Shown: positions 1,492 to 61,550, counted from the first letter of the stretch. The stretch is DNA of 64,000 bases from Lama guanicoe (GCA_013239625.1 MU057344.1:126276-190275); one strand, 5' to 3'. Notes: generated by a model from the letters alone, not told the origin. A program made the numbers and translations.

Positions 1492-30789
<29,298 letters not shown>

Positions 30790-32030
30790 GCCACACCACA
30801 CCCACCACCTACCCTGCTGTAATTATTTTCTATTTTTGTAAACTTGTTGCTTTTTTGATATGATTTCCTTGCCCATGTGTCGGCCGGAGGGACTGCTGGC
30901 CCAGCCTCCCTCCTATCCAGGCAGGCGAGCTGCAGAGACAGACTTGGTGCCCAGGGACTCTCGGGGTGATGGGGGTGGAGGTGATGTGGCACGTGGAGGG
31001 CTTGGCTCACTTGGCAGTCTTGGGATGTGCCCCTCTGCCTCAAGACACCGTGTCCTGGCCTCTTGGGCTGTGCCTTCCCCGTGTGTCCACTCATGTTGGC
31101 CCTCGTGTTTTCCAGCCTGTCAGCAGACCTCACATACACGCTGCCTATGTTCCATCTGGTGAGACCAGTGTCCACAGAGCAGGAGGGCCCTTCCTCTATG
31201 CAGGCTCTATGAGGCCTTTCTGGGGTCCCACCTGAGCCATTCCTCCTTCCAGCATGTGCCCGCTGGGGCTAGCCTCACCAGGGCTAGCCGAGCCAGGGCC
31301 AGCCCCTCCAGGGCCTCCTGTGCCAATACTGTGACTTGGAAAAAATGTCACTGTTGGGGCGACACTGCACCTTCCCTCCAGCTGTGCCCACTAGTCGCAA
31401 GGCACTGGAGAGTGGAGGCCAGGCCCAGGCCTGTTCAGGGCACCCTGGCCGTCAGCTGGCCCTGCCCATCCATCCAGCCACCCTCAGCATGGCTGTGTTC
31501 CCTCCCTGTAAGGAGTCTGAGAGGGAGCGGGGCTACTGTGTGGTATGGTTGACGTCTACTGCCTGCTTACCTGGGCTGCAGGCATCCTCTCTCAAGGAGG
31601 CATGTCCAGTCCTGACCACCAACCACAGTCTTAATGTATTGATTTTAGTTGACATCTGTGGTGGTGGGGCTGTTGTCTTTCCTGTCCTGGATTGAGGGCA
31701 GCTGAGGACACTACACAGCAAACCTCTCCAATTCTAGTGCAAGAAGTGGCTGTCCTTATCCAGGAATGACCAGGAGCTGACCAAGGCCAAGGGGTAGGTG
31801 TAGGAGTGGCAGAGATGGCTGCAAAGCCAAAAATGTCTTAAACTGCAATGTTAGGTTTCATCTGGTCTGGTCTCCACTGTCTGCCTGTGTCCCGTCCTGG
31901 TCAGGGTGGCAGCCCCGAGCCTCCCACAGCCCCTCCCACAGCCAGGCCTCGGCTGTCTGGCTTAGAAGCTGGAGGGAGCCTCATATGTCCTGTTACTAAC
32001 TCCAGTACGTGTCTGTGTCAATCGCCGTGA

Positions 32031-32036
32031 AATAAA
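32031..32036 (+). terminator. AGRN polyadenylation signal
   Basis: AATAAA about 1.24 kb after the stop, followed by GT-rich sequence. Confidence 0.8.
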
Positions 32037-33239
32037 GTCTAAACACTTTAAAGAGGTGCTTGCATGTGTACCCACAAACCACTGCCATCAGCCCCACCTG
32101 GCCCTGCACTCGCCCACCTGGCTGGTTCTTCTTTATAGTAGCTTCTTGCTCCCTTAGGTGGCTCTGGATGGACGAGGGTCCCAGCGATGGGGTGGGGGGC
32201 TGCTTTTGGTAAGGAGACCCCATGCAGTGAGTGTGCACTGCTGTGCATGGGTGAGCTCCTGGTGGCCTCCTTCAGGACTGCAGGTCTTGCCACGGGTGCA
32301 TGTGCCTGAGTGTCTGCACACATATCAGCCTGTTCTGTGTGTCTGTGAACACAGTATGGGAGGAGGGGCTGTGCGGAGAGCGGGCTGAGGGGGAGCCAGG
32401 ATGGGATGGGGGGAGGGGGAAGAGGGAGGATAGGGGTTGGGGTGTGGGGTGGTCCTGTGCTGGGATGGACACAGGGTGGAGGAGGCACTGACTGAGGCAC
32501 CCTGATGCATCTGGAGGGGCTAAGCTGGAGGAGCTGAGGCCACCTGAATGGAGTGCAGAAGGCCATGGGATACCAGGCAGAGGGGAGGCTGGGCTGAGGC
32601 CTGGCACATGAGGGAGTAGGCAGGCTCTGCTAGGTGCTAAGTGAGGGGAGAAGAGGCCCCCAGATGGGGAGATCAAGGAGAAGGTGGGACGGGAAGCTGG
32701 AAGGAGCAGGAGAGGGTGCTCTGGGAGCTGATACTTCCAGAAGGAGGGGGCTCTCAGGGCAACCAGTGCTAAGGTTGCAGGACCCTCAGGTGGTCAGGAG
32801 GGTGAGGAAGAGGAAGAGCAGTGGGCAGTGAGGGCTGACCTGCCCTCAGCACTGGTGGGTGGGGATTTGAGATCAGAGGTTGCAAGCAGCAGAAGGCTCT
32901 AAGCCCTGGTGTACCACTCCTGAAAAGGCCAGAGGGGCTGGGCAGAGCCTGGGCAGGCCCTGACACACCTAATGGGAATCCCAAAGTTAGGAGCCCAGGC
33001 ATGGAAGGGTGGAGCCCCAGGGACAGACTCATGAGAGGTGATTGTCCAGTGGGGGCAGGATGGGGATGACAAGCTAGCCTGGTGGGGGCAGTTGTAGCAG
33101 GACAAAGGCCCTGAGATCCAGGGAATGTCTGCATCATTTAGGAAGTGTAGCGACCAGGTAGGGCACAGAGGTGGGGAGGAGGGAGGAAGGCAGCCCCAAG
33201 CCAGGACGGTGTAAGAGGAAAGACCTGGTTATCACCTGG

Positions 33240-33960
33240 GCTCCCACCTCCGCCCCTCTGGGGTCTCGTCTGGGGTCCCCCGTGGGACGCGGGGCGGGTG
33301 GGAAATGTTCCGCCCCCTCATCCAGCTCCGAGCCCCTCCTTCAGAATGTGGGGACCACAGCCCCTTCTCCCCGAGAACGGAGGCGGAGCCGGAAAGGTTC
33401 TTGGAAGGAAAGCGCCCACGTGAGCTGAACCGCGCCACTCGGAGCAGGGCCGCCCGGCGCCTTCCCTCTCCGAGCCCGGGACGTCGTGTGACCCCTAGGG
33501 CGCCCTCGGGACCTGCTGCTTTTATTCCGGTCTCCCAGCGTCTTGAGACATGAGGGCGCTGGGCCTTTAAGAGAGATTGGGAGGGGCGGGGCCTCTAGGT
33601 AGGCGTGGCCAGGTGGGCGGAGTGGGCCAGTTGTGGGCGGGGCTCCAATGGGCGGGTCCTCTTTGTGGGCGTGGCCTCCTCGGCCCCGGCCAGAGCTTCC
33701 AGACCGAGCAGACATGACCTCGCGCAGGTGAGCCTGGCCACCCGGTGGCCCGACGCCACGACCCCACGACATGGGCTTAGGGCTGACGGGCGCAGACAGG
33801 GCCGGGACGTCTCCCGCTCCTGACCGGTGGCCTCCAGGCCTGGCCTTCTGACACTCACCCACCTCCAGAGCCAGGGCCACCGGATACCTGTGTCCCGCGC
33901 CAGAGAGGCCTAGCCTCACTCAGGAGGCTGGAAAGGACTCTTTTCGATCGGGGTTACTGG
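33240..33960 (+). promoter_or_regulatory. CpG-island promoter of the SHP-like phosphatase gene
   Basis: CpG-rich. Several GC boxes (GGGGCGGGGC 33583-33592 and others to about 33675), ATTGG 33576-33580 and CCAAT 33645-33649 directly upstream of ATG 33714. Confidence 0.8.
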
Positions 33961-36900
33961 GCCTGGGTCGGGGTCAGAGGTACCCTGACCCTAGGGAACG
34001 GATTGTGTCCTTAGGTGGCAGTGGCTGGAGCCTAGAGTGGGCAGCATGTGTCAGGTCAGAGGCAGACCCTCCCTCTCTCACTCCCCTGGACTCCTTGCCC
34101 TGCTTCAGGCTGCCTTTTGGCCACTAGAGATGTGTTCTGCCTGGCAGGGTATCCCACCTCCTCCAGGCCTGAAACTGAGGGTATCCTGGAGGCTTCAGTC
34201 TCCCCCTCTAGGTGTGGCCCCTGCAAAGACAAGTCCCCCTCCACAGGCTCATCTCCCCCACAACCGCCTAAGGCCAGGCTTAGGAGCAAGCTCCTGGGGT
34301 GTGTGTGAGAGCCAGCTTCTGGCCTCCATGAAGAGGGAAGGTGGGACGTGTGCAGGGAGGGGCACTTTCTGCCCTTTCTACCAGATCCCAGCTCCCCGAG
34401 TGTGTGCACACATGCATGTGAGCTCAGACTCTAGCTGGGCATGGGTGTCAGTGGGGAGCTACTCAGGTGTAAGATGCATGTCACCGCTTCCTGGCACTTG
34501 GCACATCCAGAACACCCCTCTGGGGCTTGATGAGGCTGGATGTCATTGGAGGGGGTCACCCTAAGACCCTGAGTGACTCCCTAGATCAGTGAGGGACTGA
34601 ACAAGGTCTGATCTGCAGGGCCCAAGGCAGTGCCTCAGCTGTGAGGGTCCCAGAATCCTTCCAAGGGTGTGGTGATCCTGGCACAGTGGCCTCTGGCAGG
34701 GTCAAGGGCCCTCTTAGGCTTAGGAATAGTGGAAGTGGGTTGAATCTCTAGGAACTTGTCAGTCCCAGAGCCCTGTGATTCCAAGGTTTAACATCCAGCT
34801 GGAGCTCAGGGAGGAGGGCATTTTGGGGTCTGGTTGGAATGACCCGTCTGGCTCCCCTCAGCCTCACTCTTGCTTGTCTCCTAGGCATCTCTGGTGCTCA
34901 GAAAAAGCCATATCCATGTCATGTGCATGTGACCCTGGGCCAACCTGGGAAAGCCCCGGGTGGGGCTCTGCCTGCCCCTGCCAACCCTCCCTGCCCAAGC
35001 TTGTGATGACCATCTGGACTGTCACTCCTCTGGCCCCTGGGTCTCTGCCCACACCCCTATCAGGCCTGGGCAGGCCCAACCAAATCCCAAGTAAAGCTCA
35101 TCCCCCCATGCCTGCCCCCACCCTCTGGCCCCTTCCTGTAGCCCTGTGGTTTGTGGGTCAGTGTGCACCTCCATCAGCATCACTCACCCAGGACTCTGGT
35201 GCTGTGGGCAGGGCTGGGCATGGTCCTGCCAGAGTGCTGTGGTTTGATGTGTTGATATTGGTGTCTGAGGGAGGAGAGTATAGCTCAGTGGTAGAGTGCC
35301 TACCTAGCATGCACGAGGTCCTGGGTTCAATCCCCAGTACCTCCATCAGAAGTAAATAAATAAAACCTACCCCCCAATAAAATAAAGTAAAAGATATTAG
35401 TGCCTGGGAGGAAGCTGGGTCCACAGGAAGAGGAGGGTACAGCTGAACCCGCTCAGGTTCCCTCTCTGTTCAAAGTTGGAGAGGAAAATGTGTCTCTGAT
35501 TAATCTGGTCCTGCACAGACAGGACAGACGTTGATTGAGTTTCCTCGGAGGAGGGGCTGGGGGACAGGGAGATGGAGAAGGACAGTGACTATGTTCTGGG
35601 GCCCTCAGCCCTGGAATTCCAGCCTGGGACCCTTCTCCACTGGCCTGTGTATCTCCCACCATCACAATGTCTTCCCTACAGGTGTGTCCAGCCCCTGTCC
35701 CATGTGTGCATAAGCATGTTGACAGGCTGCTCACTGGGTCTCCTAGAGTCCCAGGGTTGGAGCAGTGCCATACAGATGGGACACCAAGGCCACAAAGGAA
35801 GCTGGCCAGCGGGTTTAGGCTGATCTCTTAGGTAACCTGGGCTGTCCCTGGGCTCCTGAGCACTGACTGGACTCAGCTGGGCCCAGGCTGTTAGACTTGT
35901 GGAGAGCCCAGTATGCCCTGCTCAGCCCACCTGGCTCTCTCCCGGTTCTGCCTGACCCATGTCACCACAGCAGAGCTGAGTCACTGACCCACCACAGAGC
36001 AGGGACCCCTTCAGCACAGAAATGACTCTGAGCCCTGGGCACAGAGGGGGCGTGGAGATTGGAAATGGGGACCTGCAGCCTCCCTACCTCCTTCCACCCC
36101 TTCAGCCAGGCGCAGCCAGCTGGCCTGCTAGGAACCTGGCTCCTGGTAGTCGGGTGTGTGGGAGGGCAGTGGTGTGAGCTGTTGCACCCTCTCTGGACGT
36201 CCCACCCCTAGAGATTTCCACCTGATAGACCCAGGGGCAGTTTGCGTGGAGGAGAGAGGGATGAAAAGTAGGAATGAGAGTCCTGGAAAGGACATACACT
36301 GTGCCCTTCACCCCTTGCTGTGGCTTTGATGCTGGTCTCCACCCTCTATCCCTGCCCCCACACTCTGGGCATTGCCCACCTTGGACTGGAGTCTGTGGCT
36401 GCTGGGGCCGGGGGAGGGGCAGCCGGGTACAGGATGTGGTTCAGCAGAATAGGTGGACGGGCTTGCGGGGGGGGGGGCGGCCGGAAGCCTTCTTTTTGGT
36501 TCTAGTCCCCCCACCCCCACTGCAGTGTCTCAGACGGCACAAGGCCATCACCCTTTTCCTGGTGGCCTCACCTGCTCTCCTGTGACTGGACCTGGAGGTC
36601 ATTCTGTGGCAGCTCCTGCCCCAGGAAGTCTTCCCTGGCAGCCTCACCTGCCAGACCACTCGACCAAAATTGCCCCCAGGTCTGGGTCCTCCTCCTGTAG
36701 GAGAGAGCTTGAGACCCCAGGCCCCAAACATGCCCAGGAAGTGCCAGGCTGGTAGTACCCCTACTTCCCCCAGGGAGAGTGGGAGTGGGAGCACTGGGCG
36801 GCCCTGGGCACATTGTCTGAGCTTCTGGGCCTCTGTGAACCAATATGTGGACCCTGGGGAGCCACAGAAGTCAGAATGGAGTGTGTCCTCCCCGGGGCTA

Positions 36901-39900
36901 ACGTATAATGGTGACGACACAGGGGACAGGTGAACACAGAAGCATGTACACGCCTATCTGCTGTTAACCAGTGCCACATTTGGAAGGTGGAGCAGTGATG
37001 CAGCTTGACTGGGAAGGACCTCTCAGGAAACAGGCAGGGAGGGAGTATGAGCCATGGCCACAGGGGTAGGTGGGAAGTGGCCAGACGAGGGGAGAGGTCA
37101 GGGAACAGAGATGGAGAACACGGTATTTGCCGTGGTGGTTCTGCCAGGTGTGTCGGTGTCCTGAGAGCCACAGAGGGCCACTGGCGAGGTTTAGGTGGCT
37201 CTGATCTCCATTTTCTGAGAATCCCTCGGTCTGCCATGGCTCGGCTGTAGGGTCAGAGATGAGGCCCAGGGACCTGGAATCAGTACTGTCATCCAGGCAA
37301 GAGCTGATGGGCGCTGGCCCCAGGGTGCTGGGAGAAGTGTTTGGCTGTGGGGTATTTAGAAGGCAGGGCAAGAGGGTGGCGAGGTTGGGAGGGTGCTGGA
37401 GGACTTGCGGGCAGGACCTGAGTGACGGGGAGGTGGTGGCCCCCTTCACAGAGTGAGGACCGTGCAGAAGAACGGGGGCTTGAGGGTGTTATCGGGAGGT
37501 TTGAATGTTGCAGATTTTAAGATAGAGATGCTGGTACCTGTCCAGAGATGCTGAGAAGAGTTGTGTCTGTGAGTCTGAAGTTCAGGCCCAGGCAGGGCTG
37601 GAGTTGAGATGGTGTGTGGATGTGTAGACGTGTGTAGGTCACAGGAGAGGGGCTCTGACATTATAGGGCCAGAAAGAAGAGGAAGAGGACGCCAGTCGGA
37701 TGTGGTGCAAAACCAGGGGAGTTTGCACACTTGAGAACAGCAGAGTGGAGGTCGCACTTCTAGAAGGAGGCATGATCCGCCGCGTCAGATGCTGCTGAGG
37801 ATTGAGGCCTGACCACCGGCCCCAGGAGGCGGGTGAGAACCTGTGAGCCCCAGTCTCAGTGGGGCTGGGGGGCACCAGGATTCAGGGCTGTGGGGACTCA
37901 GGCGAAGATGGGCAGTGCTGACCAACTTTCTGTGGTGGTGGAAATGTTTCCACCACTGCGGTCAACAGTCCCCACCAGCTACAGCAGCTTTCAGCAGTGA
38001 AACGTGGCCCCTGTGACCAAGACTGGGATTGGGATTCTGCTGAATTGTAATCCATTCACGGGCACACCCCACACAAGCCATAGGCTGCGTACTGGGCAGC
38101 GCAACATAGACTGTGCAGGGGGATGGCTCCTTAGAGGTGTTGGACAGGAGCTGAAGTCAGGGCACAGGAGGCCTGAGAACGGGGTGGAGGGAGGAGGGGA
38201 GGGCCCGGAGGGAAGAAAGCGGACAGCTTTTACACAAGAGACGCGATCTGATTCCCATTCCGGAAGGACCTCAGTGGGGCAGCTGTGGGGGCAGAGCAGG
38301 GTCCTCCCGGGGCACAGCAGCCACCCCACTTGTGCCCAGGTTATGACTGCAAACAGCTGGTCGGGGCCTGGGGACGCAAGGCAGTGGAGTTGGAGTTGGA
38401 GGCCTGGTTTCCCTCTGGGTGCAGGACTGGGCAGGACCATCCCCCACACCATGTGTCACTGTGCAGTGAGCTGGGGACACACTTCAACCAGGTGTCCCAA
38501 GCTCCTCCTGCAGTGACCCTTGGTGACCCTGGGGGAGATGGTGTTGCCAGTGAAAGGCCAATTACAGCGCCACAGGGTCATGCTGGGGGATTGCAAAGGG
38601 GTCCGTGCTCTGAGGGGCTCTGGCACTACCACATTAGTGTGATTGAATCAAGGCCCGGAAACTCCTGCCCTAATGGGGAGATGCACTGAGACAGAAAACA
38701 CCACGGCGAAGAAAACAGCAGTTGCAATCTCAGACGTGGGCTCACGTGCAGCCCTGAGCTGTACCCCCATCCCCTTGGGGGCTGTAAAGGACCGTCCCAG
38801 GGTGGGGGTGGGGTTGAGTCCCCTTAGCATGGACGCCCCGCTTGGTCCTCCACCAAGACCTGCCTCAGCCTGAATTGGGCCCTGCAGTCCGCAGGACCCG
38901 CGGTGATCCTCTGGGCCTCCCTGGCCCAGCCCCACGCGCAGCCCAGCCACCAGCCACCTGCTTACCCACCACTCACCACCCATTCAGTAGTCATTTACTT
39001 CTGAATTCAAGCCCAGTTGTTAGCCCGCAGGCACTGTTTAGGGCCCTGGGTACACGCTGCACAGTGTCTGCCCTTGTGGGGCTTCAGTCTCAAGCAGAAG
39101 ACATGCAACAAGCCAATAAATACATAATATACGTCAAAGAGATGACAAATGCTACGAAGGGAAATAAGGCAGAATAAGCATCGAAGAGTGAGGTGATGGG
39201 CCCCCAAGTCACGGGAAGTGGCCGGGAGTGAGGACGGCTGGGGCGGAGGCCCTGAGGTGCGTGGCCTGGTGTGGGTGAAGGGCTAAGGCTGGCAGGTAGG
39301 AAGGGCGAGTGCTGACGGCATGGGAGGTGGTTGTGGGCCCATGGGCTGTTCTCCTGTTCTGGGGGGCTGACCAAGTGACTGACACGATGTGCTAGGGTCC
39401 CTCGGGTGGCCAGGACTGGGAGTGGTGGGGCCGAAAGGGTCTGCCCATGGGCTGTAAGGGATGGGGGACCCTGGGCCTCTCTGGGGCATCCTTGGTGCCT
39501 TTGGCTGAGCTGGGCCGGCGGTGGGTGAGGGAGAGGCCAGGCACAGGAGGTTTGAGCCAGAAGGTTTGAGCTGAGGTGCCTGGTGGCGTCCTGTGGGGGT
39601 GCTGGAGGGGCCCTGTCCTGCCCACCTGCCACTGTGGGAGATTTCCACCCATCTGTGTCCCTGAGACCCCACAGCCCCGCCTCCTTCCCTGTGGGCCTCA
39701 GACCCCGTGGGCACAGCCCAAGGGAGGCAGCAAGCGCAGGGTGGCAGCACGGGCATAGGGGGTGTCTGCCGCTGAGGCCAGGACGAAGAGTGGGTGTGGC
39801 CGGCACTGCCCAGCACCGCCCGCCCTCGGGGGCACCAGCTTGCCGTCCTCATTCCAGGTGGTTTCACCCCCGCGTCAGCGGAGTTGAGGCGGAGAAGCTG

Positions 39901-42900
39901 CTCCTGTCCAGGGGCCAGCACGGGAGCTTCCTGGCAAGACCCAGCAAGAGCTGCCCAGGGGGCTTCACCCTGTCAGTCAGGTGGGTGAGCGCTGCAGCCA
40001 GGTGTGAACCAGCCTGAGACCCCAGGAGACCTCAAGGGGTCCGCACACCCGAAGCTGAGAACACAGCTGGGGATCCGGCTCCCCAGTCCTCCTGGGGTGG
40101 GGGCCCCTGCTGGGGGCTAGACACATGAGATTTTGGTTCTGTGGGACGAATGGTATTCCTGGCCAGGTGGCCTCCAGGAAGGAGGGAACCACTTAGAAAG
40201 GCCTTCGGGGAGGGCTCCGTGAGTGGAGCATCGGCAGGACACCCCCTCCCCAGCTCTCTAAGGGGCCTCCGTGCTCCCATCTCCTGGGGGTGTTGCCCAC
40301 TGCCGCCCACTGTGGGTCTGGCCAGAGCCCATGAAGGGTCCATTGTGTGTGGGAGGATGAGCAGGAGGGGCCACGACCAGCAGAGTGGACAGCCAGGCCC
40401 ATGTCCACCCTGTGGTCTAGGGAGGGGGGCTTCCAAAAGGGCTCAGATTTTTCCAGATTTCTGCTAACACTGAGGCAGCAGGTGGGACTGAGGTCAGCCC
40501 TCAGGATGGATCCCCCACCCTGGAGAGACAGGTGCTCCTCCCCGGGGCTTCCCAGGCCGCACTGTGACACATGGGGGAAGCAGTCTTGAGGGCCAGTCCC
40601 CCATCGTCGGGAGCCCGTGGACAGGTGGTCTGGGCTGACGCAGAGCCTGCCATGGGAGGGTCAGGCCTGGAGTTGGCAAGCGCAGTCTTGGCTGCCCCAC
40701 GGCAGTGGGAGTGGGGTGCCCACCACCCAGGGTGGGGCCTGGACACTGGCTGGACACAGAGCTGCAGTGGAGGGGTCTGGCCTTGGCTATGGCTGTTCCT
40801 GGCAAGGGGACGGCAGAGACTGTGACCTCAGGGCAGGAAAATCCCAGCTACTGTTCTAGAAGCTGAGGGTGGCGATGGGAAGGAGGGTGGTGGGCGGGAC
40901 AGGGCTGCCGATGGTGGCTGGTGCACCGGCCCTTCCAGGCGCCACGATGAGGTGACCCACATCAAGGTTCAGAGCACCGGCGACTACTACGACCTGTATG
41001 GAGGGGAGAAGTTTGCAACGCTGGCCGAGCTGGTGCAGCACTACACAGGCCAGAGTGGGGGGCTGCTCCGGGAGCGCGGCGGGGCCCCCGTCGAGCTCCG
41101 GCACCCACTGGCCTGCCAGGACCCCACGTCGGAACGGTGAGCAACTGGGTCTGTGTCTGGCCCGGCCCCTGTGTCTGTCTGCACACGTGTGCATTCGAGT
41201 TTCTGAGGGAACAGATGGCCTCTGGGCGTCCTCTGCCCCCCAGGGCTCAGGGTCCGTCCTGGGCACGGCAAAGCTGAGGGAGTGTCCTGCACCCCCTCCC
41301 CTGGAGTTCTGGGGGCCTCATTTCTTCCAGGTCCCAGGCTCTGGCCATAGGCGTAGTTCTGCAGCCGATCTCACCCCTGCCCTCCTAGCTGGTGACCTGG
41401 TGAGCGATTCCTCCAGCCCTGGGTTCCCATCCGTGCTGCGGAGGCCTGAGAGCTGCATCTACCAAGGAAGCGGGTGGAGCTGGTCTGTGGAGACCAACTG
41501 CCCCTCCTTACTGAGGACCAGGCTGCCACCTGGTGGTCACTCTGGGGCCCTGCAGAGCCCACTTGTCCTGCCTCCTGCCGGTTTCTAGGTAGGGCAGGGC
41601 AGACTGAGGCTGGCTTGGGCCCCCGACGCCTAGGGTCCTTATAGTGAAGAGGTGTCTCTTTGCCTTCCTCAGTCATCTCTCACTGTGCAGTGATGAGAAC
41701 ACGACCAACCCTTATAACCTGGCCATTTGCTTCACCCCTACACTGATGCCTGTTCTAGAAACACGGGTCAAGTGTCCTGCCAGGCTCACACAAATGAGAT
41801 TGTCCAAACCATCATCATCATCCACCACGAGACTATTTTCCCAGAAGCTGAAGAGCTGGATGGCCCTGTTTATGAGATATGTGCGGCTGGGGATGACTGT
41901 TGTGACAGCCTGCGTCTCTCATGGTGTCTGTGTCTCAAAGCCTTTGGCTACGTATGGGTCTGGGCCCCTGACCTGGCCAGGCGGGGCCCCCAGCCTCACC
42001 TGTGCCACCCTGGGCCAGGTGGTACCACGGGCACCTGTCTGGCAAGGAGGCCGAGAAGCTGCTGATGGAGAAGGGACATCCAGGCAGTTTCCTGGTTCGA
42101 GAGAGTCAGAGCAAACCTGGGGACTTTGTGCTATCAGTACTCACACAGCATCTGGACAAGGCGGACCACCAGCCACGGGTCACCCACATCATGATCCACT
42201 TCCAGGTGGGAGGTGGCAGCTGAGGTGGGGTGTGACTCAGGGGAGGGGGCAGCAGCCAGGCCCCTCACTGCTGCCCCCACAGCCAGATGGGAAGTACAAC
42301 GTGGGAGGAGGGGAGCAGTTCGACACCCTGGGAGATCTGGTGGAATGCTACAAGAAGAACCCCATGGTGGAGAGTTCGGGGGCCGTGGTTCACCTCAGGC
42401 AGGTACGCCCCCGGGCATTTGATCCTTGGGGTCCAGAGTGCGCTTCTCCTCCGGGGGGGAGGCCAAGGTTTGCTGGCACAGCCTCACCCAGGCAAAAGGG
42501 CGCCAGGCAGTGCTGGGACGCTGTCGCTGAGGGGAAGGATACAGGGGACAGGGCACTGTGGGTTCTTCTGGACCCTGCTAAGCTTGGACACGGGTCCCTC
42601 CCTGCCAGCCCCTCAAGGCCACGAGAATCAGCGCTGCAAACATTGAGAGCCGTGTGCAGGAGCTCAGCAAGGCCACCGATGCCAGCGGGAAGGCTAAGCA
42701 GGGCTTCTGGGAGGAGTTCGAGGTGCCTGCCTGCTGCTCATTGCCCCCTCTCAGACTCCCATCCTCTGGGGCTGTGGCAAGGGCCAGCAGAGGAGTGCGG
42801 GTCAAGGGGTGTGAGGTTGGTGTTGAGGGCTCTGGGAAAGGGTCAAGGCTCCGGGCTGAAGCCCCATCTCCCCACCCTCAGATGCTACAGCAGCAGGAAT

Positions 42901-45868
42901 GCCGGCTCCTGTATCCCCGGAAGGAGGGACAGCGGCTGGAGAACAAGCCCAAGAACCGATACAAGAACATCCTTCCCTGTGAGGGCCAGGGGCAGGGGCC
43001 ATGGGGGCCAGGGCTCCACCCACCACATTCGGGGGCCCATCTGGCAGAGGGTCCTTCGTGGGTGGAGGCAGGGTCATTTCCCACCGCTGGTGTGATGCCC
43101 CCTCTTGCCCCTTCATCTCTCGTCTCTGCTTACCACGGGTCAGTGGGCAAGGAGGTAGGTGGGGTCCTCAGGTGTCCCCTTTCTGCTGGAGACCTGAGTG
43201 GCATCTTCCCCTTCCCAGTTGATACCACCCGAGTCATCCTGCGTGACGTGGATGACAGTGTGCCTGGAGCTGACTACATCAACGCCAACTACATCAGGGT
43301 GGATGTGAGTGCGGTGTGGTTGGCCAGCTGCACACTTGGCTCTGCATGAATCAAACGTGGCATCTGAGGCCATGTCTGGCCACATAACAGTCACCTTCTC
43401 CCCCTATTATGAGCCTGGAGCTCCTGCTGGCCCCCAGTGATCTGGGGACTTTGGCACAACAGTAGATATTCAGGGGGAGGGGTGCAGCAGTCCCCAAGGG
43501 GTCCTCAGAGGGGTCCTCTGAGCCTGTACAACTAAATATTGGTCCTGACCCCTCCTTAGCCTAGGGTGGGGCAGACTGTGTGTGTGAGCCACCTGGGCTA
43601 GTTTGCATGTCATTGCATCACCTTGCACTTAGCCTCTGGCACTTTAATTCCTGGAAACAGCAGGCAGCTGACCCCACCTCCTTTCAGAGTGACCCAGAAG
43701 AGAAGCCAGGCCATGGACTGGGCAAGGTGTACATCGCCACTCAGGGCTGTCTGCAGACCACGGTGGCTGCCTTCTGGGCCATGGTGTACCAGGAGAACAC
43801 ACGTGTCATTGTCATGACCACCAGGGAGGTGGAGCGAGGCCGGGTAGGGGCTCAGCCTCATGTCCCCCCCTCCTCCCACCCCCACCCCTTGTGTAGGGAG
43901 CAGGGAGGGCCCTGGACAGACCCGCATATGCCCCACAGGGCTGAGGGGCAAGGATGCTGGTGGTCTTCCAGCACGGCTGATGCAATGCACCCACTCCCCC
44001 AGAACAAGTGTTTCCGATACTGGCCAGAGCTGCATGGCAGCCAAGACTATGGCCGCCTGCACGTGTGCAATGCAGCTGAGTACCAGGCCCAGGGTTACTG
44101 TGTGCGGGAGCTGCAGGTGTGGCGGCCAGACCAGGTGAGCCTGGAGGGCACAGGAGGTGTGGGGCCAGAGTCAGAGTGGTCAGGAAGTCCCCAGGTCTGC
44201 ACTGGGGTGAGGAGGCCCTATGCTGGCCCTGCCTCCACCCAACCCTGCTGGCCCTGGTGGCTTCCATATCCCTCAACCCAGTGGGCACAGTCCTGGCCTG
44301 GGCTCTTCTGGACAGTGTTCCCAGATGGGCACGTTCTCAACCCCAGTTGCCTGGCTCCAGAGTGGCCTCACACCCACATTGGCCTCTCCCTCCGGTCTTT
44401 CCCTGGACCATCTCAGCACCTGTGGCCTCCTTTATATGCCAGTGGTGCCTATTTCTACCCCAGGCACAGATCCCTCCCCACTAGTCCCCTGTGTAACCAC
44501 CTGGGGGGCGTCCTGCATGCCCTCTTCATTTGGCCCTTCCCAAAAATAACTCAGAGTCCAGAAACCTGCTCCCTCCTGCGGATGATCTGTCTTCCCTTCC
44601 TCAGGCACCCAAGCCACCTGGGGCTACCTGGGGTCACCTTGGGCCACCTGAGCCACCTGGGGCCACCTGGGGCCACCTGGGCCTGATGGCCCATCTTTTC
44701 CTACCACTCCCTCCTGCTCAGTCTGGGCCCGGCTGGTCACTCCTTGGGAAACCCCGCTAAGCCACGGCCTGCCTCCCTCCAGTCCCTCTTCGTTCCCTGC
44801 GTGTCTCCCACCGCGACGGTCACAGAAGCAACACTGAGGCCCGGCCAGTCTGGGACCCTCCCAGACCAGCCAGGCTGAAGCTCACCATCCTGCCCTGCCT
44901 AGGAGAGGTCGGCGCGCACAGTGAAGCACTATCAGTACTTCAGCTGGCCGGACCACGGGGTCCCGGCCGAGCCCGCCGGCGTCCTCGGCTTCCTGGACGA
45001 GGTGAACCGGGCCCAGAGCAGCATGCCGGGGGCCGGACCTATGGTGGTGCACTGCAGGTGCGATCGGGACGGGGAGGGGCGGGGCCAGCGGCTCAGGTGC
45101 GACCAGGGAAGGTGCCCGCGGCTTTGTCCTGTCAGCTGGTCACAAGCTTCCTGGTCCGTCCCCACAGCGCGGGCATCGGACGCACTGGCACCATCATTGT
45201 GATTGACATCCTGGTGGACTTCATTCGCAAGCAGGGTGAGCCGCCCCTGGCTGGCTGGCCCGCCCTGCCGACCCCGCCCCCTTCATCTCGCCCTCCCACC
45301 CCTCCCTACCGGCCCCGCCCCGCCCTGCCCTGAGCGCGCTCGTCCCCAGGGCTGGACTGCGACATTGACGTCCCCAAGACGATCCAGCTGGTGCGGCGAC
45401 AGCGCTCGGGGATGGTGCAGACCGAGGCGCAGTACAAGTTCGTGTACCTAGCGCTGCGGCGGTACATCCAGGGCGAGCAGCTGCGCCTGAGCGAGCAGGC
45501 TGCGGCGGGGCCGGGCCGGGGCGGCGCCTGCGCGGGCATCACCATGGTGACCAGTGGGCCCGCCCCTCAGCGCGAGCGGCCGGAGGAGCGCGACTCTCTG
45601 AGTGTGGGCGCCTCGCCCGCTGACCCTGGCTGGAGCCCCGGGCCCGCGCCGTCCCAGGCGCCGGCGGCGTGAGTAGGGCGTAGGGCACCGGAGCGGGCGG
45701 TGACCGGGCCGGGAGCAGGGGGGCCTCGGGGGCGGGCCCCGAGTGGGGGCGTGGCCCGGGCGAGGGGGCGTGGCCGCGCGTGGGCCCCCGCGGAACCCGG
45801 TCTCCTCTCGCAGGACTCCAGAGGCCTCTGGCCGCGTGTGTGAGAGCCTGCAGGGCCTCGGGAGATGA
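33714..45868 (+). CDS. SH2-SH2-PTP tyrosine phosphatase, PTPN11/SHP2-like paralog (third SHP family member), 15 coding exons, about 581 aa
   Basis: Exons: 33714-33727 (MTSRR), 39858-39980, 40939-41136, 42019-42205, 42283-42402, 42609-42722, 42882-42978, 43219-43298, 43688-43843, 44003-44134, 44903-45057, 45168-45235, 45350-45498, 45571-45668, 45814-45868 (TGA). Sum 1746 nt with no internal stop. N-SH2 WFHP...FLARPS, C-SH2 WYHG...FLVRES. PTP motifs [52 protein letters not shown]. The intron-13 donor is non-GT. Confidence 0.9.
35269..35392 (+). mobile_element. tRNA-derived SINE (camelid Vic-type) in intron 1 of the SHP-like gene
   Basis: A box TAGCTCAGTGG, B box GGTTCAATCC, A-rich tail. Imperfect target-site duplication GATATTGGTGTCTGAG (35254-35269) / GATATTAGTGCCTGGG (35393-35408). 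Confidence 0.9.
37913..38102. mobile_element. MER3-like non-autonomous hAT DNA transposon
   Basis: cagtgctgaccaa...tactgggcagcgc terminal inverted-repeat remnants and the internal actttctgtggtggtggaaatgtt motif. Confidence 0.55.
38975..39200 (-). mobile_element. L2 LINE 3' fragment
   Basis: attcagtagtcattta...caggcactgtttagggccctggg...tgcccttgtggggcttcagtct resembles the antisense L2 3' end. Confidence 0.55.
41634..41910 (+). pseudogene. Intronless SRGAP1-derived fragment (RhoGAP C-terminal part) in intron 3 of the SHP-like gene
   Basis: Translates to [42 protein letters not shown], then after a frameshift [48 protein letters not shown]. This matches recalled SRGAP1 ([32 protein letters not shown]...[19 protein letters not shown]). 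AT content is higher than the flanks. Confidence 0.85.
44613..44681. repeat. 10-bp minisatellite (GCCACCTGGG)x~7
   Basis: Directly visible tandem array in intron 10 of the SHP-like gene. Confidence 0.85.
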
Positions 45869-46150
45869 GGGCCCCGCGTGCGCACGCCCCGAGTGAGGTT
45901 GGAACCGCGAGGAGGCAGCGCCCAGCCAGGCCGGCCCCCTCATTCCTCGAAAGGACTGTGTTTAGGACAGTGCAGACTGGAGCTCATCCCGGAGCGCGGG
46001 GGAAGGGGTCCCGGGTCTGCCGCTCAGACCCTCCCTGACCAGGCCTGCACGCCCAGAGATGGGAAGGGCGGTCGATTGATCCGGTGTCACCGCCTCTCCT
46101 GGGGCTCCCAGGGGAAGGTGGAGGAGGGGCGGCAGGGCTGCGGTTTGTCT
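44900..46150. promoter_or_regulatory. 3' CpG island over exons 11-15 of the SHP-like gene
   Basis: Very high CpG and GC-box density in both exons and introns. Confidence 0.65.
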
Positions 46151-47440
46151 CCGCGTGGGAGGCCACCAGTGACAACCTGCACCGCTCGCTGAGCACGTGT
46201 GACCTTGTGTGTGCCAAGTGTTTGAGTGCCGGCCTGTATGTGGGACCTGAGTGGCCGGCAAGTGAGTACCAATGTGTCCTGGACCTGACTGTGTCACCAG
46301 CGTTGGTGCCCAGCTCCCCTGCATCCAGGGCACCCCCCTCACCCATCCCTTCGGAGCTGCTTCTCAGCCCTGTCCAGAGCGGTGGTCTGGGGTGTGGCCC
46401 AGGCAGTGGCTCAATTCCTGACTTGACCAGATGTAGCCCAGACCATCACGCTGAGGTCACGCGTGGATAAATGCTTGTTGAATGAAGGAGTATATGACCT
46501 GCTCATGTGACACCCGTGTGACGAGGGCAAAGCTCCCTGTGTGCATGACTGGTGTGTGATGCTGTGATGTCACTGGCATGTGGCCTGTGGTCCCACCCCC
46601 GACACGGATGGCCCTGTGTCTTTGTGGTAGCCTCAGTAAAATGCCTTGTTCTCAGTTCTGTGTCCTTGTAGGGGCCTGGGGCAAGGGTACATGTGAGTCC
46701 CCACAGCTCGGCCCAGCTTCCCCAGGGTGTCCCTGTGCCCTCTCCCCTCCCCAGCCAGAGGCCCAGCTGGGTGTAGCAGGAAGTCCTGGGTTTTGGGGTG
46801 AAGGATGAGGAGGCTAAGACCTGCGCGAGCCAGACCAGCCTGGCCTCTCTTCACCATGCCAACCTGGTGGTGCAGGATTCCTGAGGCCAATAGCAGAACC
46901 GGGTGGGGTTGGGGGTGGGGGTTGGCAGGACTCCCGCCCATCCCTTGAGACACTGCTGCTTCACCAGCCAGGCCTGGCCCAGGGAGGGTCTGCCAGAGGG
47001 CCCTGAGGTCTGTGGATCCAGGACACGCTGGTTTTAGCAACCTCTGGGATGACTTCTGGGGAGTGCAGCCTGGTGTGAACACGGTGGGGGATGGGGAGGA
47101 GGACTCTGGACGAGGCCAAGGCCCTACACCAGTCCTACCTGCCCCAGGTGCTCTGGACCCTCCCTATTTCCCTGGGGGAGCCTCCCAGCCCTGGGGGCCA
47201 GCCAAGTCCAGACGTGCTCCAGCCCGTCCACAGCCCAGAGAGGACAGGAGTTGGACCCCCTAGAACCTGAGGCCAGCCACTTAGGGGCTGCTAGGAGTCC
47301 AGGCCAGTGCAGGTATCCTCTGTACTGAGGGTCTTTGCAGCAGGGGAAGACTGTGAGCTTTTCTGGAGGAAAGGGTTTAGTGGTACAGGAAGGAGGACAC
47401 ACAGCCTGAAGACCTCTTACCAACTGCGGGTACAAAATAA

Positions 47441-47446
47441 TTTATT
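47441..47446 (-). terminator. RNF223 polyadenylation signal
   Basis: TTTATT on + (AATAAA on -), about 525 nt beyond the RNF223 stop. Confidence 0.75.
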
Positions 47447-47970
47447 TAAAAATGTACAGTTCACCAGGTGGGATGAGCACTGAGGGACTGGGCTCCCTGC
47501 CACTTCCCTCTGTCCCCCTGGTCACCCAAGGAAGGGGCCAGCCCTGCCTGGGGAAGGACTCTGGGGAGGGAGCCATGGGTGAAATGTGCATATGAAATAA
47601 GGATGGCAAGTCCTCTCCCTTTTCAGCAAAGGGGCTGTGCCTGCAGACGATTCAGTGTATAGGGAGGGTCCCCACCAAGCTGCTGCTCCTGGGCCTCAGT
47701 GTCCCCACCTGCATAATGGGAGTTATGGGGGTGGCCTCTGGGGTCCATAGGAATCTCTGATTCTTGGAAGCTCAGGGGAACTTTTTGTCCACCCCATAGG
47801 ACCGGGCCCCAGAGAGTCAGGGGCAGGTGAGCCAAATGGGGGTGTGGGTGCCTCAGAGATACTGGGGCTCCTCTGGGATCCCAGGGCTGGACCCCAGCCA
47901 GCTGCTACATCCCATGACCCCAGCTGTGGGCTGGGCAGCCACACCTGGAACTGGGGTGGCGGTGATGACC

Positions 47971-48804
<834 letters not shown>

Positions 48805-51915: not shown

Positions 51916-51949
51916 NNNNNNNNNNNNNNNNNNNNNNNNNNNNNNNNNN
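51916..51949. other. Assembly gap (34 N) within a G-rich low-complexity repeat
   Basis: N run flanked by GGGGCTCAGA(G)-type repeats (about 51848-51995). Confidence 0.95.

Positions 51950-53699: not shown

Positions 53700-61550
<7,851 letters not shown>

What the first reader, a model, noticed from the sequence alone, without database searches (positions are those of the whole stretch)
33714..45868. Intact third SHP-family phosphatase gene (PTPN11-like) between AGRN and RNF223
Seen: 15 exons splice into an open 581-codon SH2-SH2-PTP frame. It starts MTSRRWFHP, has a 14-nt first coding exon 6.1 kb upstream under its own CpG/CCAAT/GC-box promoter, and keeps the catalytic Cys, WPD loop and Q loop. 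Known: many exon sizes (14,123,114,97,80,132,155,68) and the phases match PTPN11 as I recall them, but mammals are usually said to have only SHP1 (PTPN6) and SHP2 (PTPN11), and neither lies next to AGRN. No functional human gene is recognised here; I recall a decayed SHP-like pseudogene in human 1p36.33, unverified. Inference: this is an ancient intron-containing paralog, not a retrocopy, kept in this lineage and lost in primates. It may be the true ortholog of fish ptpn11b and is an essentially uncharacterised signalling phosphatase.
Basis: partly seen in the sequence, partly recalled or inferred. Interest (0 to 1): 0.92.

Follow-up and report, generated by a model that had tools for sequence, protein, structure and literature searches.

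The report
Intact SHP-2L phosphatase gene, already described
The window holds an intact, intron-containing third SH2-SH2-phosphatase gene beside AGRN, but this gene (SHP-2L, fish ptpn11b) was described in 2025 and NCBI already annotates it in many mammals, so this is a real but ordinary ortholog in a camelid-like genome.

Summary
On the + strand at 33714-45868, a 14-nt first coding exon under a CpG island plus 13-14 further exons give an open SH2-SH2-PTP frame. The frame is 581, 583 or 607 codons depending on two splice choices.

It also uses the weaker of two donors at exon 8. Camelus gene models retain that intron, giving 607 aa.

PMC12151841 (2025) named this gene SHP-2L. That paper places it next to AGRN from sharks to mammals, reports its loss in glires and higher primates, and equates it with zebrafish ptpn11b.

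My tree puts the window protein beside Camelus ferus SHP-2L (98% identity), inside the SHP-2L/ptpn11b clade. An AU test rejects a recent mammalian PTPN11 duplicate (p 2e-38).

All 121 columns invariant across the aligned family are kept. dN/dS against a bovine fragment over exons 11-14 is 0.28.

Lineage details: both C-terminal YxN tyrosines are gone, and placental SHP-2L evolves fast.

Apart from a re-read of this same stretch, the scan's index holds one related note (C-tail motifs), which I confirm.

The parts
33200..34000 (+). CpG-island, TATA-less promoter region around the first exon, with GC boxes at 33584, 33615, 33635 and 33650 and a CCAAT at 33645
   Evidence: CpG o/e is 0.46-0.80 and GC 0.66-0.71 here, against o/e 0-0.16 on both sides. 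The sequence was read.
33714..33727 (+). Coding exon 1 (14 nt, encodes MTSR plus 2 nt), donor CAG|GTGAGC
39858..39980 (+). Exon 2 (123 nt), first half of the N-SH2 domain. The phosphotyrosine-binding Arg32 is at 39937-39939.
   Evidence: Pfam SH2, E 5.6e-13
40939..41136 (+). Exon 3 (198 nt), second half of N-SH2, including the [18 protein letters not shown] segment that blocks the active site in SHP-2
42019..42205 (+). Exon 4 (187 nt), first part of C-SH2. Arg139 is at 42098-42100.
   Evidence: Pfam SH2, E 3.5e-19
42283..42402 (+). Exon 5 (120 nt), rest of C-SH2. It carries the window-specific change D180N in KYDVGGG, and Val at the position of SHP-2 L210.
42609..42722 (+). Exon 6 (114 nt), the linker from C-SH2 to the PTP domain
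42882..42978 (+). Exon 7 (97 nt), start of the PTP domain, with the KNRYKNILP phosphotyrosine-recognition loop
43219..43304 (+). Exon 8 (86 nt). It contains DYINANYI.
43688..43843 (+). Exon 9 (156 nt), PTP domain
44003..44134 (+). Exon 10 (132 nt), PTP domain
44903..45057 (+). Exon 11 (155 nt). The WPD loop is at 44945-44953 and the catalytic Cys460 at 45053-45055.
45168..45235 (+). Exon 12 (68 nt), the rest of the P-loop (AGIGRTG)
45350..45498 (+). Exon 13 (149 nt). The Q loop QTEAQ is at 45418-45432. End of the PTP domain.
45499..45570 (+). Intron 13, or a retained 24-codon insert. It is 72 nt, in frame, has no stop, and its donor is GC (CAG|GCTGCG). Bovine has GT at this site.
45571..45668 (+). 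Exon 14 (98 nt), disordered tail. The former first YxN motif now reads S-L-S (45595-45603).
45814..45868 (+). Exon 15 (55 nt including the stop TGA at 45866-45868). The former second YxN motif now reads C-E-S (45839-45847).
30763..32036 (+). Context: end of AGRN. The C-terminal coding exon ends with a stop at 30787-30789, and an AATAAA lies at 32031, about 1.7 kb upstream of the SHP-2L ATG.
   Evidence: (Kazal exons at 20.3-22.8 kb)
47971..48765 (-). Context: a convergent single-exon RING-finger gene with a hydrophobic C-terminal stretch (probably a tail anchor). It belongs to the RNF183/223/225 family and is RNF223 by position.

Best explanation
This is the camelid-lineage ortholog of SHP-2L. 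NCBI calls the gene 'PTPN11-like' in mammals and ptpn11b in fish. It is the third, ancient member of the SH2-SH2-PTP (SHP) family and sits in its conserved place just downstream of AGRN. It looks like an intact gene under purifying selection, not a pseudogene.

By inference from sequence conservation with SHP-2, it is a cytosolic tyrosine phosphatase with these features:
- At rest, the N-SH2 loop ([18 protein letters not shown], fully conserved) holds it shut by sitting in the catalytic cleft.
- It opens when the two SH2 domains (Arg32, Arg139) bind a doubly phosphorylated ITIM/ITSM-type or receptor/scaffold motif.
- It hydrolyses phosphotyrosine with Cys460 (P-loop [11 protein letters not shown]), Asp426 (WPD loop) and Gln507/Gln511 (Q loop).

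In this lineage both C-terminal YxN tyrosines are lost. The tail therefore probably cannot serve as a phospho-dependent Grb2 dock. Intron 13 has lost its GT donor and is probably read through as a 24-residue insert in the disordered tail.

Shown here: the exon structure, the open frame, the domain content, the clade, the synteny, the retained family-invariant residues, and dN/dS below 1.

Inferred only: expression, splicing details, catalytic activity, autoinhibition and binding partners.
For: **Open frame and domains**
- The frame is open over 14-15 exons, with GT-AG at all but one intron.
- Per-exon Pfam hits are SH2, SH2 and Y_phosphatase.
- The best PDB hits are SHP-2 chains.

**Orthologs and phylogeny**
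- NCBI and UniProt annotate orthologs as PTPN11-like in many placental mammals, with Camelus closest.
- The window protein is 98% identical to Camelus ferus P0005, differing at 12 of 607 residues.
- It lies inside Cetartiodactyla, inside the SHP-2L/ptpn11b clade. Support for that clade is SH-aLRT 99 on the quick tree and 94/98 on the careful tree; the SHP-2 clade has 100/100.
- The AU test rejects a mammal-specific duplication of PTPN11, p 2e-38.

**Constraint**
- All 121 columns invariant across SHP-1, SHP-2, SHP-2L, corkscrew and Capsaspora are kept. Only 6 of 168 near-invariant columns differ.
- Against a bovine genomic fragment (L025) over exons 11-14, dN is 0.070 and dS 0.248, so omega is 0.28 (bootstrap 0.15-0.50). 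The PTP exons give omega 0.23. Intron JC distance is 0.29.
- Exons are far better conserved than the in-frame introns next to them in pig-like and bat-like ORFs: 84/96 against 53/89, and 87/96 against 31/83.
- The camelid branch is the shortest among cetartiodactyl SHP-2L branches.

**Promoter and expression hints**
- A CpG-island promoter is preserved.
- Three RNA-seq runs hold 0.22-0.26 of the sampled 31-mers of 39850-45849. By my count a fully spliced mRNA would hold 0.22-0.235. DNA runs hold 0.90-0.95.

**Literature**
- PMC12151841 names the gene and describes its synteny and range.
- PMC3988099 shows that zebrafish Shp2b is catalytically active and rescues Shp2a loss.
Against:
- Placental SHP-2L evolves fast. 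The placental stem branch is 0.33-0.34 changes per site. The distance from the amniote node to the tip is about 0.6 here, against 0.07 for a bird and 0.18 for a marsupial, while SHP-2 barely changes.
- An omega of 0.28 is high for a core signalling enzyme, and the tail exon reaches 0.48.
- Both tail tyrosines are lost.
- The intron-13 donor has changed from GT to GC.
- D180N falls at a near-invariant C-SH2 site.
- There is no AATAAA or ATTAAA on the + strand within 2.1 kb after the stop.
- The same gene has been lost independently in glires and higher primates (PMC12151841), so it is dispensable in some mammals. Zebrafish ptpn11b-/- fish are viable (PMC3988099).
- The dN/dS figure covers only about a quarter of the CDS. 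It also measures the whole camelid-bovine path, not this lineage alone.
- The AlphaFold model of the camel proxy did not reproduce the closed SHP-2 arrangement.
Confidence: 0.85

Rival explanations
1. The gene is a unitary pseudogene in the making. SHP-2L would have lost its function in this lineage, or in placentals generally. The frame would then be open only because too little time has passed, as happened before the gene's loss in primates and glires.
For: - The placental stem branch is long and placental rates are high.
- Both YxN tyrosines are lost, and the window has further N-to-S changes in both motifs.
- The intron-13 donor is mutated to GC.
- D180N falls at a near-invariant site.
- There is no canonical poly(A) signal nearby.
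- The tail exon has omega 0.48.
- Other mammals have lost the gene independently (PMC12151841).
Against: - About 1.75-1.8 kb of coding sequence in 14-15 exons has no stop or frameshift, and all other splice sites are intact.
- All 121 family-invariant columns are kept, including every catalytic and pTyr-binding residue.
- Omega is 0.28, with a bootstrap upper bound of 0.50.
- Exons are much better conserved than introns.
- The camelid branch is not accelerated relative to pig, ruminant or whale.
- The CpG island is intact.
- The RNA runs hold a share of words like that of a spliced mRNA.
- The intron-13 change keeps the frame.
Confidence: 0.09
2. The gene is a recent, lineage-specific duplicate or retrocopy of PTPN11 (SHP-2) that landed next to AGRN.
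For: The best PDB and Pfam matches are SHP-2. NCBI names the orthologs 'PTPN11-like'.
Against: - The gene has 13-14 introns, so it is not a retrocopy.
- It groups with shark, ray-finned fish, lungfish, amphibian and sauropsid ptpn11b/SHP-2L, not with mammalian SHP-2.
- Forcing mammalian SHP-2L and mammalian SHP-2 together costs 346.8 lnL units, p-AU 2e-38.
- The neighbourhood with AGRN is conserved across vertebrates (PMC12151841).
Confidence: 0.01
3. The gene is functional but its role has changed. In placentals, and most strongly in camelids, SHP-2L would be kept for a narrower role, for example in immune or reproductive tissue. It would use its SH2 domains and catalytic centre but no tail phosphorylation, rather than being a redundant SHP-2.
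For: - A burst of change on the placental stem is followed by purifying selection.
- The tail tyrosines were lost in steps: the first in the cetartiodactyl ancestor and the second in camelids.
- The RNA runs that hold the exon-sized share of words are labelled reproductive system.
Against: - There are no expression or biochemical data for any placental SHP-2L protein.
- SH2 specificity residues are almost identical to those of SHP-2 (PMC12151841).
- The rate pattern fits simple relaxation equally well.
Confidence: 0.05

Closest known systems
SHP-2L (SHP-2-like; ptpn11b in fish and Xenopus; 'PTPN11-like' LOC genes in mammals, e.g. cattle LOC526769), as defined in PMC12151841
   Same: - SH2-SH2-PTP architecture.
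- Position directly beside AGRN.
- Clade membership.
- Val at the SHP-2 L210 position of C-SH2.
- MTSRRWFHP start.
- 98% identity to the Camelus ferus protein.
   Different: Relative to most SHP-2L proteins, the camelid copy has lost both C-terminal YxN tyrosines. The window has also lost both Asn residues. It has a GC instead of a GT donor at intron 13, so a probable 24-residue tail insert. It has two alternative donors at exon 8 and a D180N change. Placental SHP-2L as a whole is far more diverged than the sauropsid, amphibian or fish copies.
SHP-2 (PTPN11)
   Same: - The same domain order.
- About 62% identity.
- The autoinhibitory N-SH2 segment, both pTyr-binding arginines, the P-loop, the WPD loop and the Q loop are all conserved.
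- By recall, several exon sizes and phases are the same.
   Different: It is a separate paralog that dates from before the split of cartilaginous and bony fish. The C-SH2 loop and the linker between C-SH2 and PTP differ. The tail lacks Y542/Y580 equivalents here. The locus is different. It evolves much faster than SHP-2.
SHP-1 (PTPN6)
   Same: A tandem-SH2 phosphatase with identical catalytic motifs.
   Different: Identity is lower (about 55%). It forms a separate, long-branched clade. Its position relative to SHP-2 and SHP-2L is not settled by my trees, because only turtle SHP-1 sequences were included.
Drosophila corkscrew and other invertebrate SHP homologs
   Same: The pre-vertebrate single-copy form of the same architecture. 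They served as the outgroup.
   Different: They lie outside the vertebrate SHP-2/SHP-2L/SHP-1 radiation.

Membership tests
SHP family (tandem-SH2 non-receptor PTPs: PTPN6, PTPN11, SHP-2L) | N-SH2, C-SH2 and one classical PTP domain, in this order, in one polypeptide | tested here: met
   Per-exon Pfam hits: SH2 in E2, E3 and E4, and Y_phosphatase in E8-E11 and E13. The exons join in one open frame. PDB best hits are SHP-2 and SHP-1.
SHP family (tandem-SH2 non-receptor PTPs: PTPN6, PTPN11, SHP-2L) | Catalytic signature: HC(X)5R P-loop, WPD loop, Q loop and KNRY pTyr loop | tested here: met
   [25 protein letters not shown] and KNRYKNILP are all present. None of the 121 family-invariant columns is changed.
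SHP family (tandem-SH2 non-receptor PTPs: PTPN6, PTPN11, SHP-2L) | pTyr-binding arginine (FLxR) in both SH2 domains | tested here: met
   FLARPS (Arg32) and FLVRES (Arg139) are present.
SHP family (tandem-SH2 non-receptor PTPs: PTPN6, PTPN11, SHP-2L) | Autoinhibition by N-SH2 docking on the PTP cleft (closed conformation) | tested here: inconclusive
   The N-SH2 blocking segment, including D61 and E76, is identical to that of SHP-2. The AlphaFold2 model of the 98%-identical camel proxy has pTM 0.59. It matches SHP-2 chains only at TM 0.47-0.58 with rmsd of about 23 Å. So the domains match but the closed arrangement is not reproduced.
SHP family (tandem-SH2 non-receptor PTPs: PTPN6, PTPN11, SHP-2L) | Two C-terminal tyrosines in YxN context (Y542/Y580 of SHP-2). 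This feature is typical rather than strictly defining. | tested here: not met
   The window reads ...RDSLSVG... and ...RVCESLQ..., where other SHP-2L proteins read ...YLNVG... and ...VYENL... The first Tyr is lost in all the cetartiodactyls examined, and the second only in camelids.
SHP-2L / ptpn11b orthogroup | Falls inside the SHP-2L clade, apart from SHP-2 and SHP-1 | tested here: met
   Clade support is SH-aLRT 99 on the quick tree (61 rows) and 94/98 on the careful tree (41 rows). The AU test against a clade with mammalian SHP-2 gives p 2e-38.
SHP-2L / ptpn11b orthogroup | Conserved neighbourhood with AGRN | tested here: met
   AGRN Kazal exons lie at 20.3-22.8 kb. Its C-terminal exon has a stop at 30787 and an AATAAA at 32031, on the same strand, 1.7 kb upstream of the ATG. 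PMC12151841 Figure 4 uses AGRN as the marker.
SHP-2L / ptpn11b orthogroup | Val in place of SHP-2 Leu210 in the C-SH2 specificity pocket (the diagnostic given in PMC12151841) | tested here: met
   In the alignment, SHP-2 ...GTVLQLKQP aligns with window ...GAVVHLRQP.
SHP-2L / ptpn11b orthogroup | Transcribed and spliced into mRNA; active phosphatase | not testable with these tools
The only hint is that RNA runs hold 0.22-0.26 of the sampled words. Activity has been shown only for zebrafish Shp2b (PMC3988099).

The most novel reading that the evidence does not exclude
Camelid SHP-2L may be a natural separation-of-function form of an SHP phosphatase. It would keep an intact catalytic centre and tandem SH2 domains under purifying selection. 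Both tail tyrosines are erased, and an intron-derived 24-residue insert became fixed when the intron-13 donor mutated. Such a protein would signal only through SH2-gated catalysis and not through the pTyr-Grb2 adaptor route. It may be expressed mainly in reproductive or immune tissue.
Probability: 0.4. Interest if true: 0.35.

Novelty: already known. Interest (0 to 1): 0.27.

Why it matters
Most accounts still say that mammals have two SHP phosphatases. A third one, kept in most mammals but lost in humans and mice, matters for several reasons:
- It bears on how SHP-2/PD-1/RTK signalling is read in livestock, carnivores, bats and camelids.
- It bears on how SHP2 inhibitors may behave in those species.
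- It is an example of the same gene being lost independently in the two lineages that supply most laboratory knowledge.

That point was made in print in 2025 (PMC12151841). What this window adds is small:
- A clean camelid-lineage gene model.
- Evidence of purifying selection (omega about 0.28 on part of the gene).
- The stepwise loss of the two tail tyrosines in cetartiodactyls and camelids.
- A mutated intron-13 donor.

No mammalian SHP-2L protein has yet been assayed.

Tried and rejected

**Ortholog DNA.** I could fetch no ortholog genomic DNA that way and could make no full-length dN/dS or branch test.

**The joined protein.** Exons were searched one by one by reference. The joined model was built only inside local scripts from window.fa, for the frame check, alignment, tree and dN/dS. 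For folding I used the 98%-identical Camelus ferus protein P0005 as a proxy.

**Folding.** The AlphaFold2 model (pLDDT 71, pTM 0.59) matched SHP-2 domain by domain but not in the closed arrangement. It gives no verdict on autoinhibition.

**Representative library.** The 50%-identity library lumps SHP-2 and SHP-2L into one cluster and carries no names. SHP-2 and SHP-1 sequences had to be reached through cluster look-up and a stickleback SHP-2 fragment.

**Rfam.** It found only a tRNA-like SINE head in intron 1.

**Poly(A) signal.** No canonical signal was found downstream.

**Readings rejected.**
- Retrocopy: the gene has introns.
- Recent PTPN11 duplicate: rejected by the AU test.
- Chance ORF: the domains and orthologs rule it out.

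**Sequences left aside.**
- P0004 (UniRef, Camelus bactrianus) is a chimeric SHP-1/SHP-2L model and was left out of the trees.
- P0016 (Bos X9) has a wrong-frame tail.
- Primate proteins that appeared in hit lists were not used.

Full report
**What is there**

Between 33714 and 45868 on the + strand lie pieces of a tandem-SH2 tyrosine phosphatase, visible already in the ORF list. The N-SH2 piece and the PTP pieces hit SHP-2 chains best in the PDB, and SHP-1 next.

I used the closest annotated ortholog, Camelus ferus 'PTPN11-like' P0005, as a guide. tblastn and a splice-site search gave a complete exon chain. The exons are listed under 'parts'.

The first coding exon is 14 nt (ATG at 33714, donor CAG|GTGAGC). 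Intron 1 is 6130 nt. The stop TGA ends at 45868.

Three variants are all open:
- 607 codons, with the 72-nt intron 13 read through, as in the camel gene models.
- 583 codons, with intron 13 spliced.

Two points qualify its model:
- Intron 13 starts CAG|GCTGCG, which is not GT and is a poor GC-type donor. Bovine DNA has GT there. Both Camelus SHP-2L models examined (P0003, P0005) translate through it. Retention is therefore the likelier outcome.
- Exon 8 has two in-frame donors 6 nt apart. The downstream one (GAT|GTGAGT) is used by the camel model. The upstream one matches the proteins of other mammals.

Neither choice affects the frame or any domain.

Searched one by one by reference, the exons give Pfam SH2 (E2, E3, E4) and Y_phosphatase (E8-E11, E13). 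It was assembled only in local scripts.

**Surroundings**

AGRN lies upstream on the same strand. Its Kazal exons are at 20.3-22.8 kb, its C-terminal exon has a stop at 30787, and an AATAAA lies at 32031.

About 1.2 kb further on begins a CpG island (33200-34000). Its CpG o/e is 0.46-0.80, against 0-0.16 on both sides. It carries four GC boxes and a CCAAT within 130 nt upstream of the ATG, and no TATA.

Downstream, on the opposite strand, is a single-exon RING gene with a hydrophobic C-terminal stretch (47971-48765), probably a tail anchor. It belongs to the RNF183/RNF223/RNF225 family. Calling it RNF223 rests on position.

No AATAAA or ATTAAA follows the SHP-2L stop on the + strand within 2.1 kb. 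Only variants such as GATAAA (46466) and AGTAAA (46635) occur.

Rfam finds only a tRNA-like SINE head in intron 1.

**What it is**

A search with the exon 9-10 region returned 'tyrosine-protein phosphatase non-receptor type 11-like' proteins from many placental mammals. These include camels, ruminants, pigs, whales, horses, carnivores, bats, pangolin, tree shrew and colugo. Marsupial, sauropsid, amphibian, lungfish and fish proteins followed.

A search from Xenopus ptpn11b.L returned only proteins of this group. NCBI names many of them ptpn11b in sharks, bichir, sturgeon, gar and teleosts. True SHP-2 proteins came from a separate search, and SHP-1 from a cluster look-up.

In a 61-row quick tree and a 41-row careful IQ-TREE tree:
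- The window protein pairs with Camelus ferus (98% identity; support 100/100).
- It sits within Cetartiodactyla, within placentals, within one SHP-2L/ptpn11b clade (SH-aLRT 99; 94/98 on the careful tree).
- SHP-2 forms its own clade (100/100).

Holding mammalian SHP-2L and mammalian SHP-2 together costs 346.8 log-likelihood units (p-AU 2e-38).

The window's species is a camelid or a very close relative, but not Camelus ferus itself: 12 of 607 residues differ.

**Already known**

PMC12151841 (Front Immunol 2025) reports exactly this gene as SHP-2-like (SHP-2L). According to that paper:
- It is conserved from sharks to mammals, in a conserved environment marked by AGRN.
- It is intact in cattle, platypus, tupaia and flying lemur.
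- It is lost or inactivated in glires and higher primates, and is represented in human by a pseudogene fragment on chromosome 1.
- It is identical with the zebrafish gene earlier called ptpn11b/Shp2b.

The paper's supplements list cattle LOC526769 but no camelid.

PMC3988099 showed that zebrafish Shp2b has catalytic activity comparable to Shp2a and rescues ptpn11a loss, and that ptpn11b-/- fish are viable.

I did not examine any human sequence.

**Is it still a working gene here?**

For:
- There is no stop or frameshift in about 1.8 kb of coding sequence spread over 12 kb.
- All 121 columns invariant across SHP-1, SHP-2, SHP-2L, insect corkscrew and Capsaspora are kept. Only 6 of 168 near-invariant columns differ, and three of those are shared with camel.
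- The P-loop, WPD loop, Q loop, KNRY loop, both FLxR arginines and the N-SH2 blocking segment are intact.

A metagenome scan gave one usable mammalian contig, L025 (1206 nt). It is bovine-like (94-98% to Bos proteins) and spans intron 10 to intron 14. Against it:
- Exon identity is 0.86-0.96 and intron identity 0.68-0.88, the highest being the in-frame intron 13.
- NG86 gives dN 0.070, dS 0.248 and omega 0.28 (bootstrap 0.15-0.50).
- The PTP exons give omega 0.23 and the tail exon 0.48.
- dS is close to the intron distance of 0.29.

Logan ORFs that read through introns 8-10 in pig-like and bat-like genomes show the same contrast. Exons match at 84/96 and 87/96 residues, against 53/89 and 31/83 for the in-frame introns.

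The camelid branch is the shortest of the cetartiodactyl SHP-2L branches.

Three RNA-seq runs labelled reproductive system hold 0.22-0.26 of the sampled 31-mers of 39850-45849. By my count of wholly exonic 31-mers, a mature mRNA would hold 0.22-0.235. DNA runs hold 0.90-0.95. This is suggestive only.

Against:
- Placental SHP-2L is fast-evolving. The stem branch is 0.33-0.34, and the distance from the amniote node to the tip is about 0.6, against 0.07 for a bird.
- An omega of 0.28 is high for such an enzyme.
- The gene is known to be dispensable in some lineages.

I put an intact, selected gene at 0.85 and incipient decay at about 0.09.

**Lineage-specific details**

The first tail motif reads Y-L-N in horse and tree shrew, and in marsupial and bird; bat has Y-Q-N. 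It is S-L-N/K in goat, bovine, pig and narwhal, and S-L-S in camel and the window.

The second motif (V-Y-E-N-L) is kept in those groups but reads V-C-E-N-L in camel and V-C-E-S-L in the window.

This confirms the scan's sister note s1-861939. It adds that the first loss dates to the cetartiodactyl ancestor and the second to camelids.

The tail (residues 537-607) is predicted to be disordered.

The window alone has D180N in the otherwise near-invariant KYDVGGG of C-SH2.

**Mechanism**

Domains, catalytic residues and SH2 arginines are shown. The rest follows from what is established for SHP-2 and from the zebrafish work: autoinhibition by N-SH2, opening by bis-phosphotyrosyl ligands, and cysteine-based hydrolysis.

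The AlphaFold2 model of the camel proxy matched SHP-2 chains at E 1e-68 and 65% identity, but only at TM 0.47-0.58 with rmsd about 23 Å. The closed state is therefore neither supported nor contradicted.

Without tail tyrosines, the Grb2-docking and tail-SH2 functions described for SHP-2 are unlikely in this lineage.

**Limits**

- Read laying gave nothing.
- The dN/dS figure covers 156 codons and the whole camelid-bovine path.
- SHP-1 was represented only by turtles, so the order of the three paralogs is not settled.
- The match of exon sizes to PTPN11 is from recall.

**Verdict**

It rediscovers a gene that was named in 2025 and that NCBI already annotates in related species.

Noticed in passing
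window 35274-35345 (+), intron 1; a similar element lies near 58.6-58.8 kb: A tRNA-like Rfam hit (42 bits). It is the head of a tRNA-derived SINE, and its translation shows the typical ...SIPSTS... reading.
   Followed up: partly
window 45869-48000 (+): No AATAAA or ATTAAA follows the SHP-2L stop before the convergent RING gene. Only variant hexamers occur (GATAAA at 46466, AGTAAA at 46635). The 3' ends of the two convergent genes may lie close together or overlap.
   Followed up: partly
proteins P0121, P0268-P0280, P0469, P0481: Voles (Microtus, Alexandromys, Chionomys, Arvicola) carry many separate 660-665-aa 'PTPN11-like' genes. They are clearly derived from SHP-2, not SHP-2L, and have a longer C-terminus. 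This looks like an arvicoline-specific amplified PTPN11 copy family.
   Followed up: no
protein P0004 (UniRef, Camelus bactrianus): A database model that joins an SHP-1-like N-terminal half to the SHP-2L C-terminal half. It is most likely an annotation chimera.
   Followed up: partly
proteins P0077 (Symphalangus) and P0106 (Pan paniscus): Predicted 'uncharacterized' primate proteins with only a PTP-domain hit. They match exons 9-10 at 45-49% identity and may be read-through models of the primate SHP-2L remnant. I left them alone on purpose.
   Followed up: no
trees: SHP-1 (turtle sequences only, branch 0.9) attaches to SHP-2L in the quick tree and falls outside the rest in the careful tree. 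The lamprey and hagfish proteins sit near SHP-2 or near the outgroup. The order of the paralog splits is not resolved by these data.
   Followed up: partly
window 55431-55988 (-): An ORF with a hydrophobic stretch that could be a transmembrane segment (...[40 protein letters not shown]...). It may be an exon of the next gene in the human order (C1orf159, by recall).
   Followed up: no
window 1563-1718 and 51916-51949: Runs of N, left as they are.
   Followed up: no
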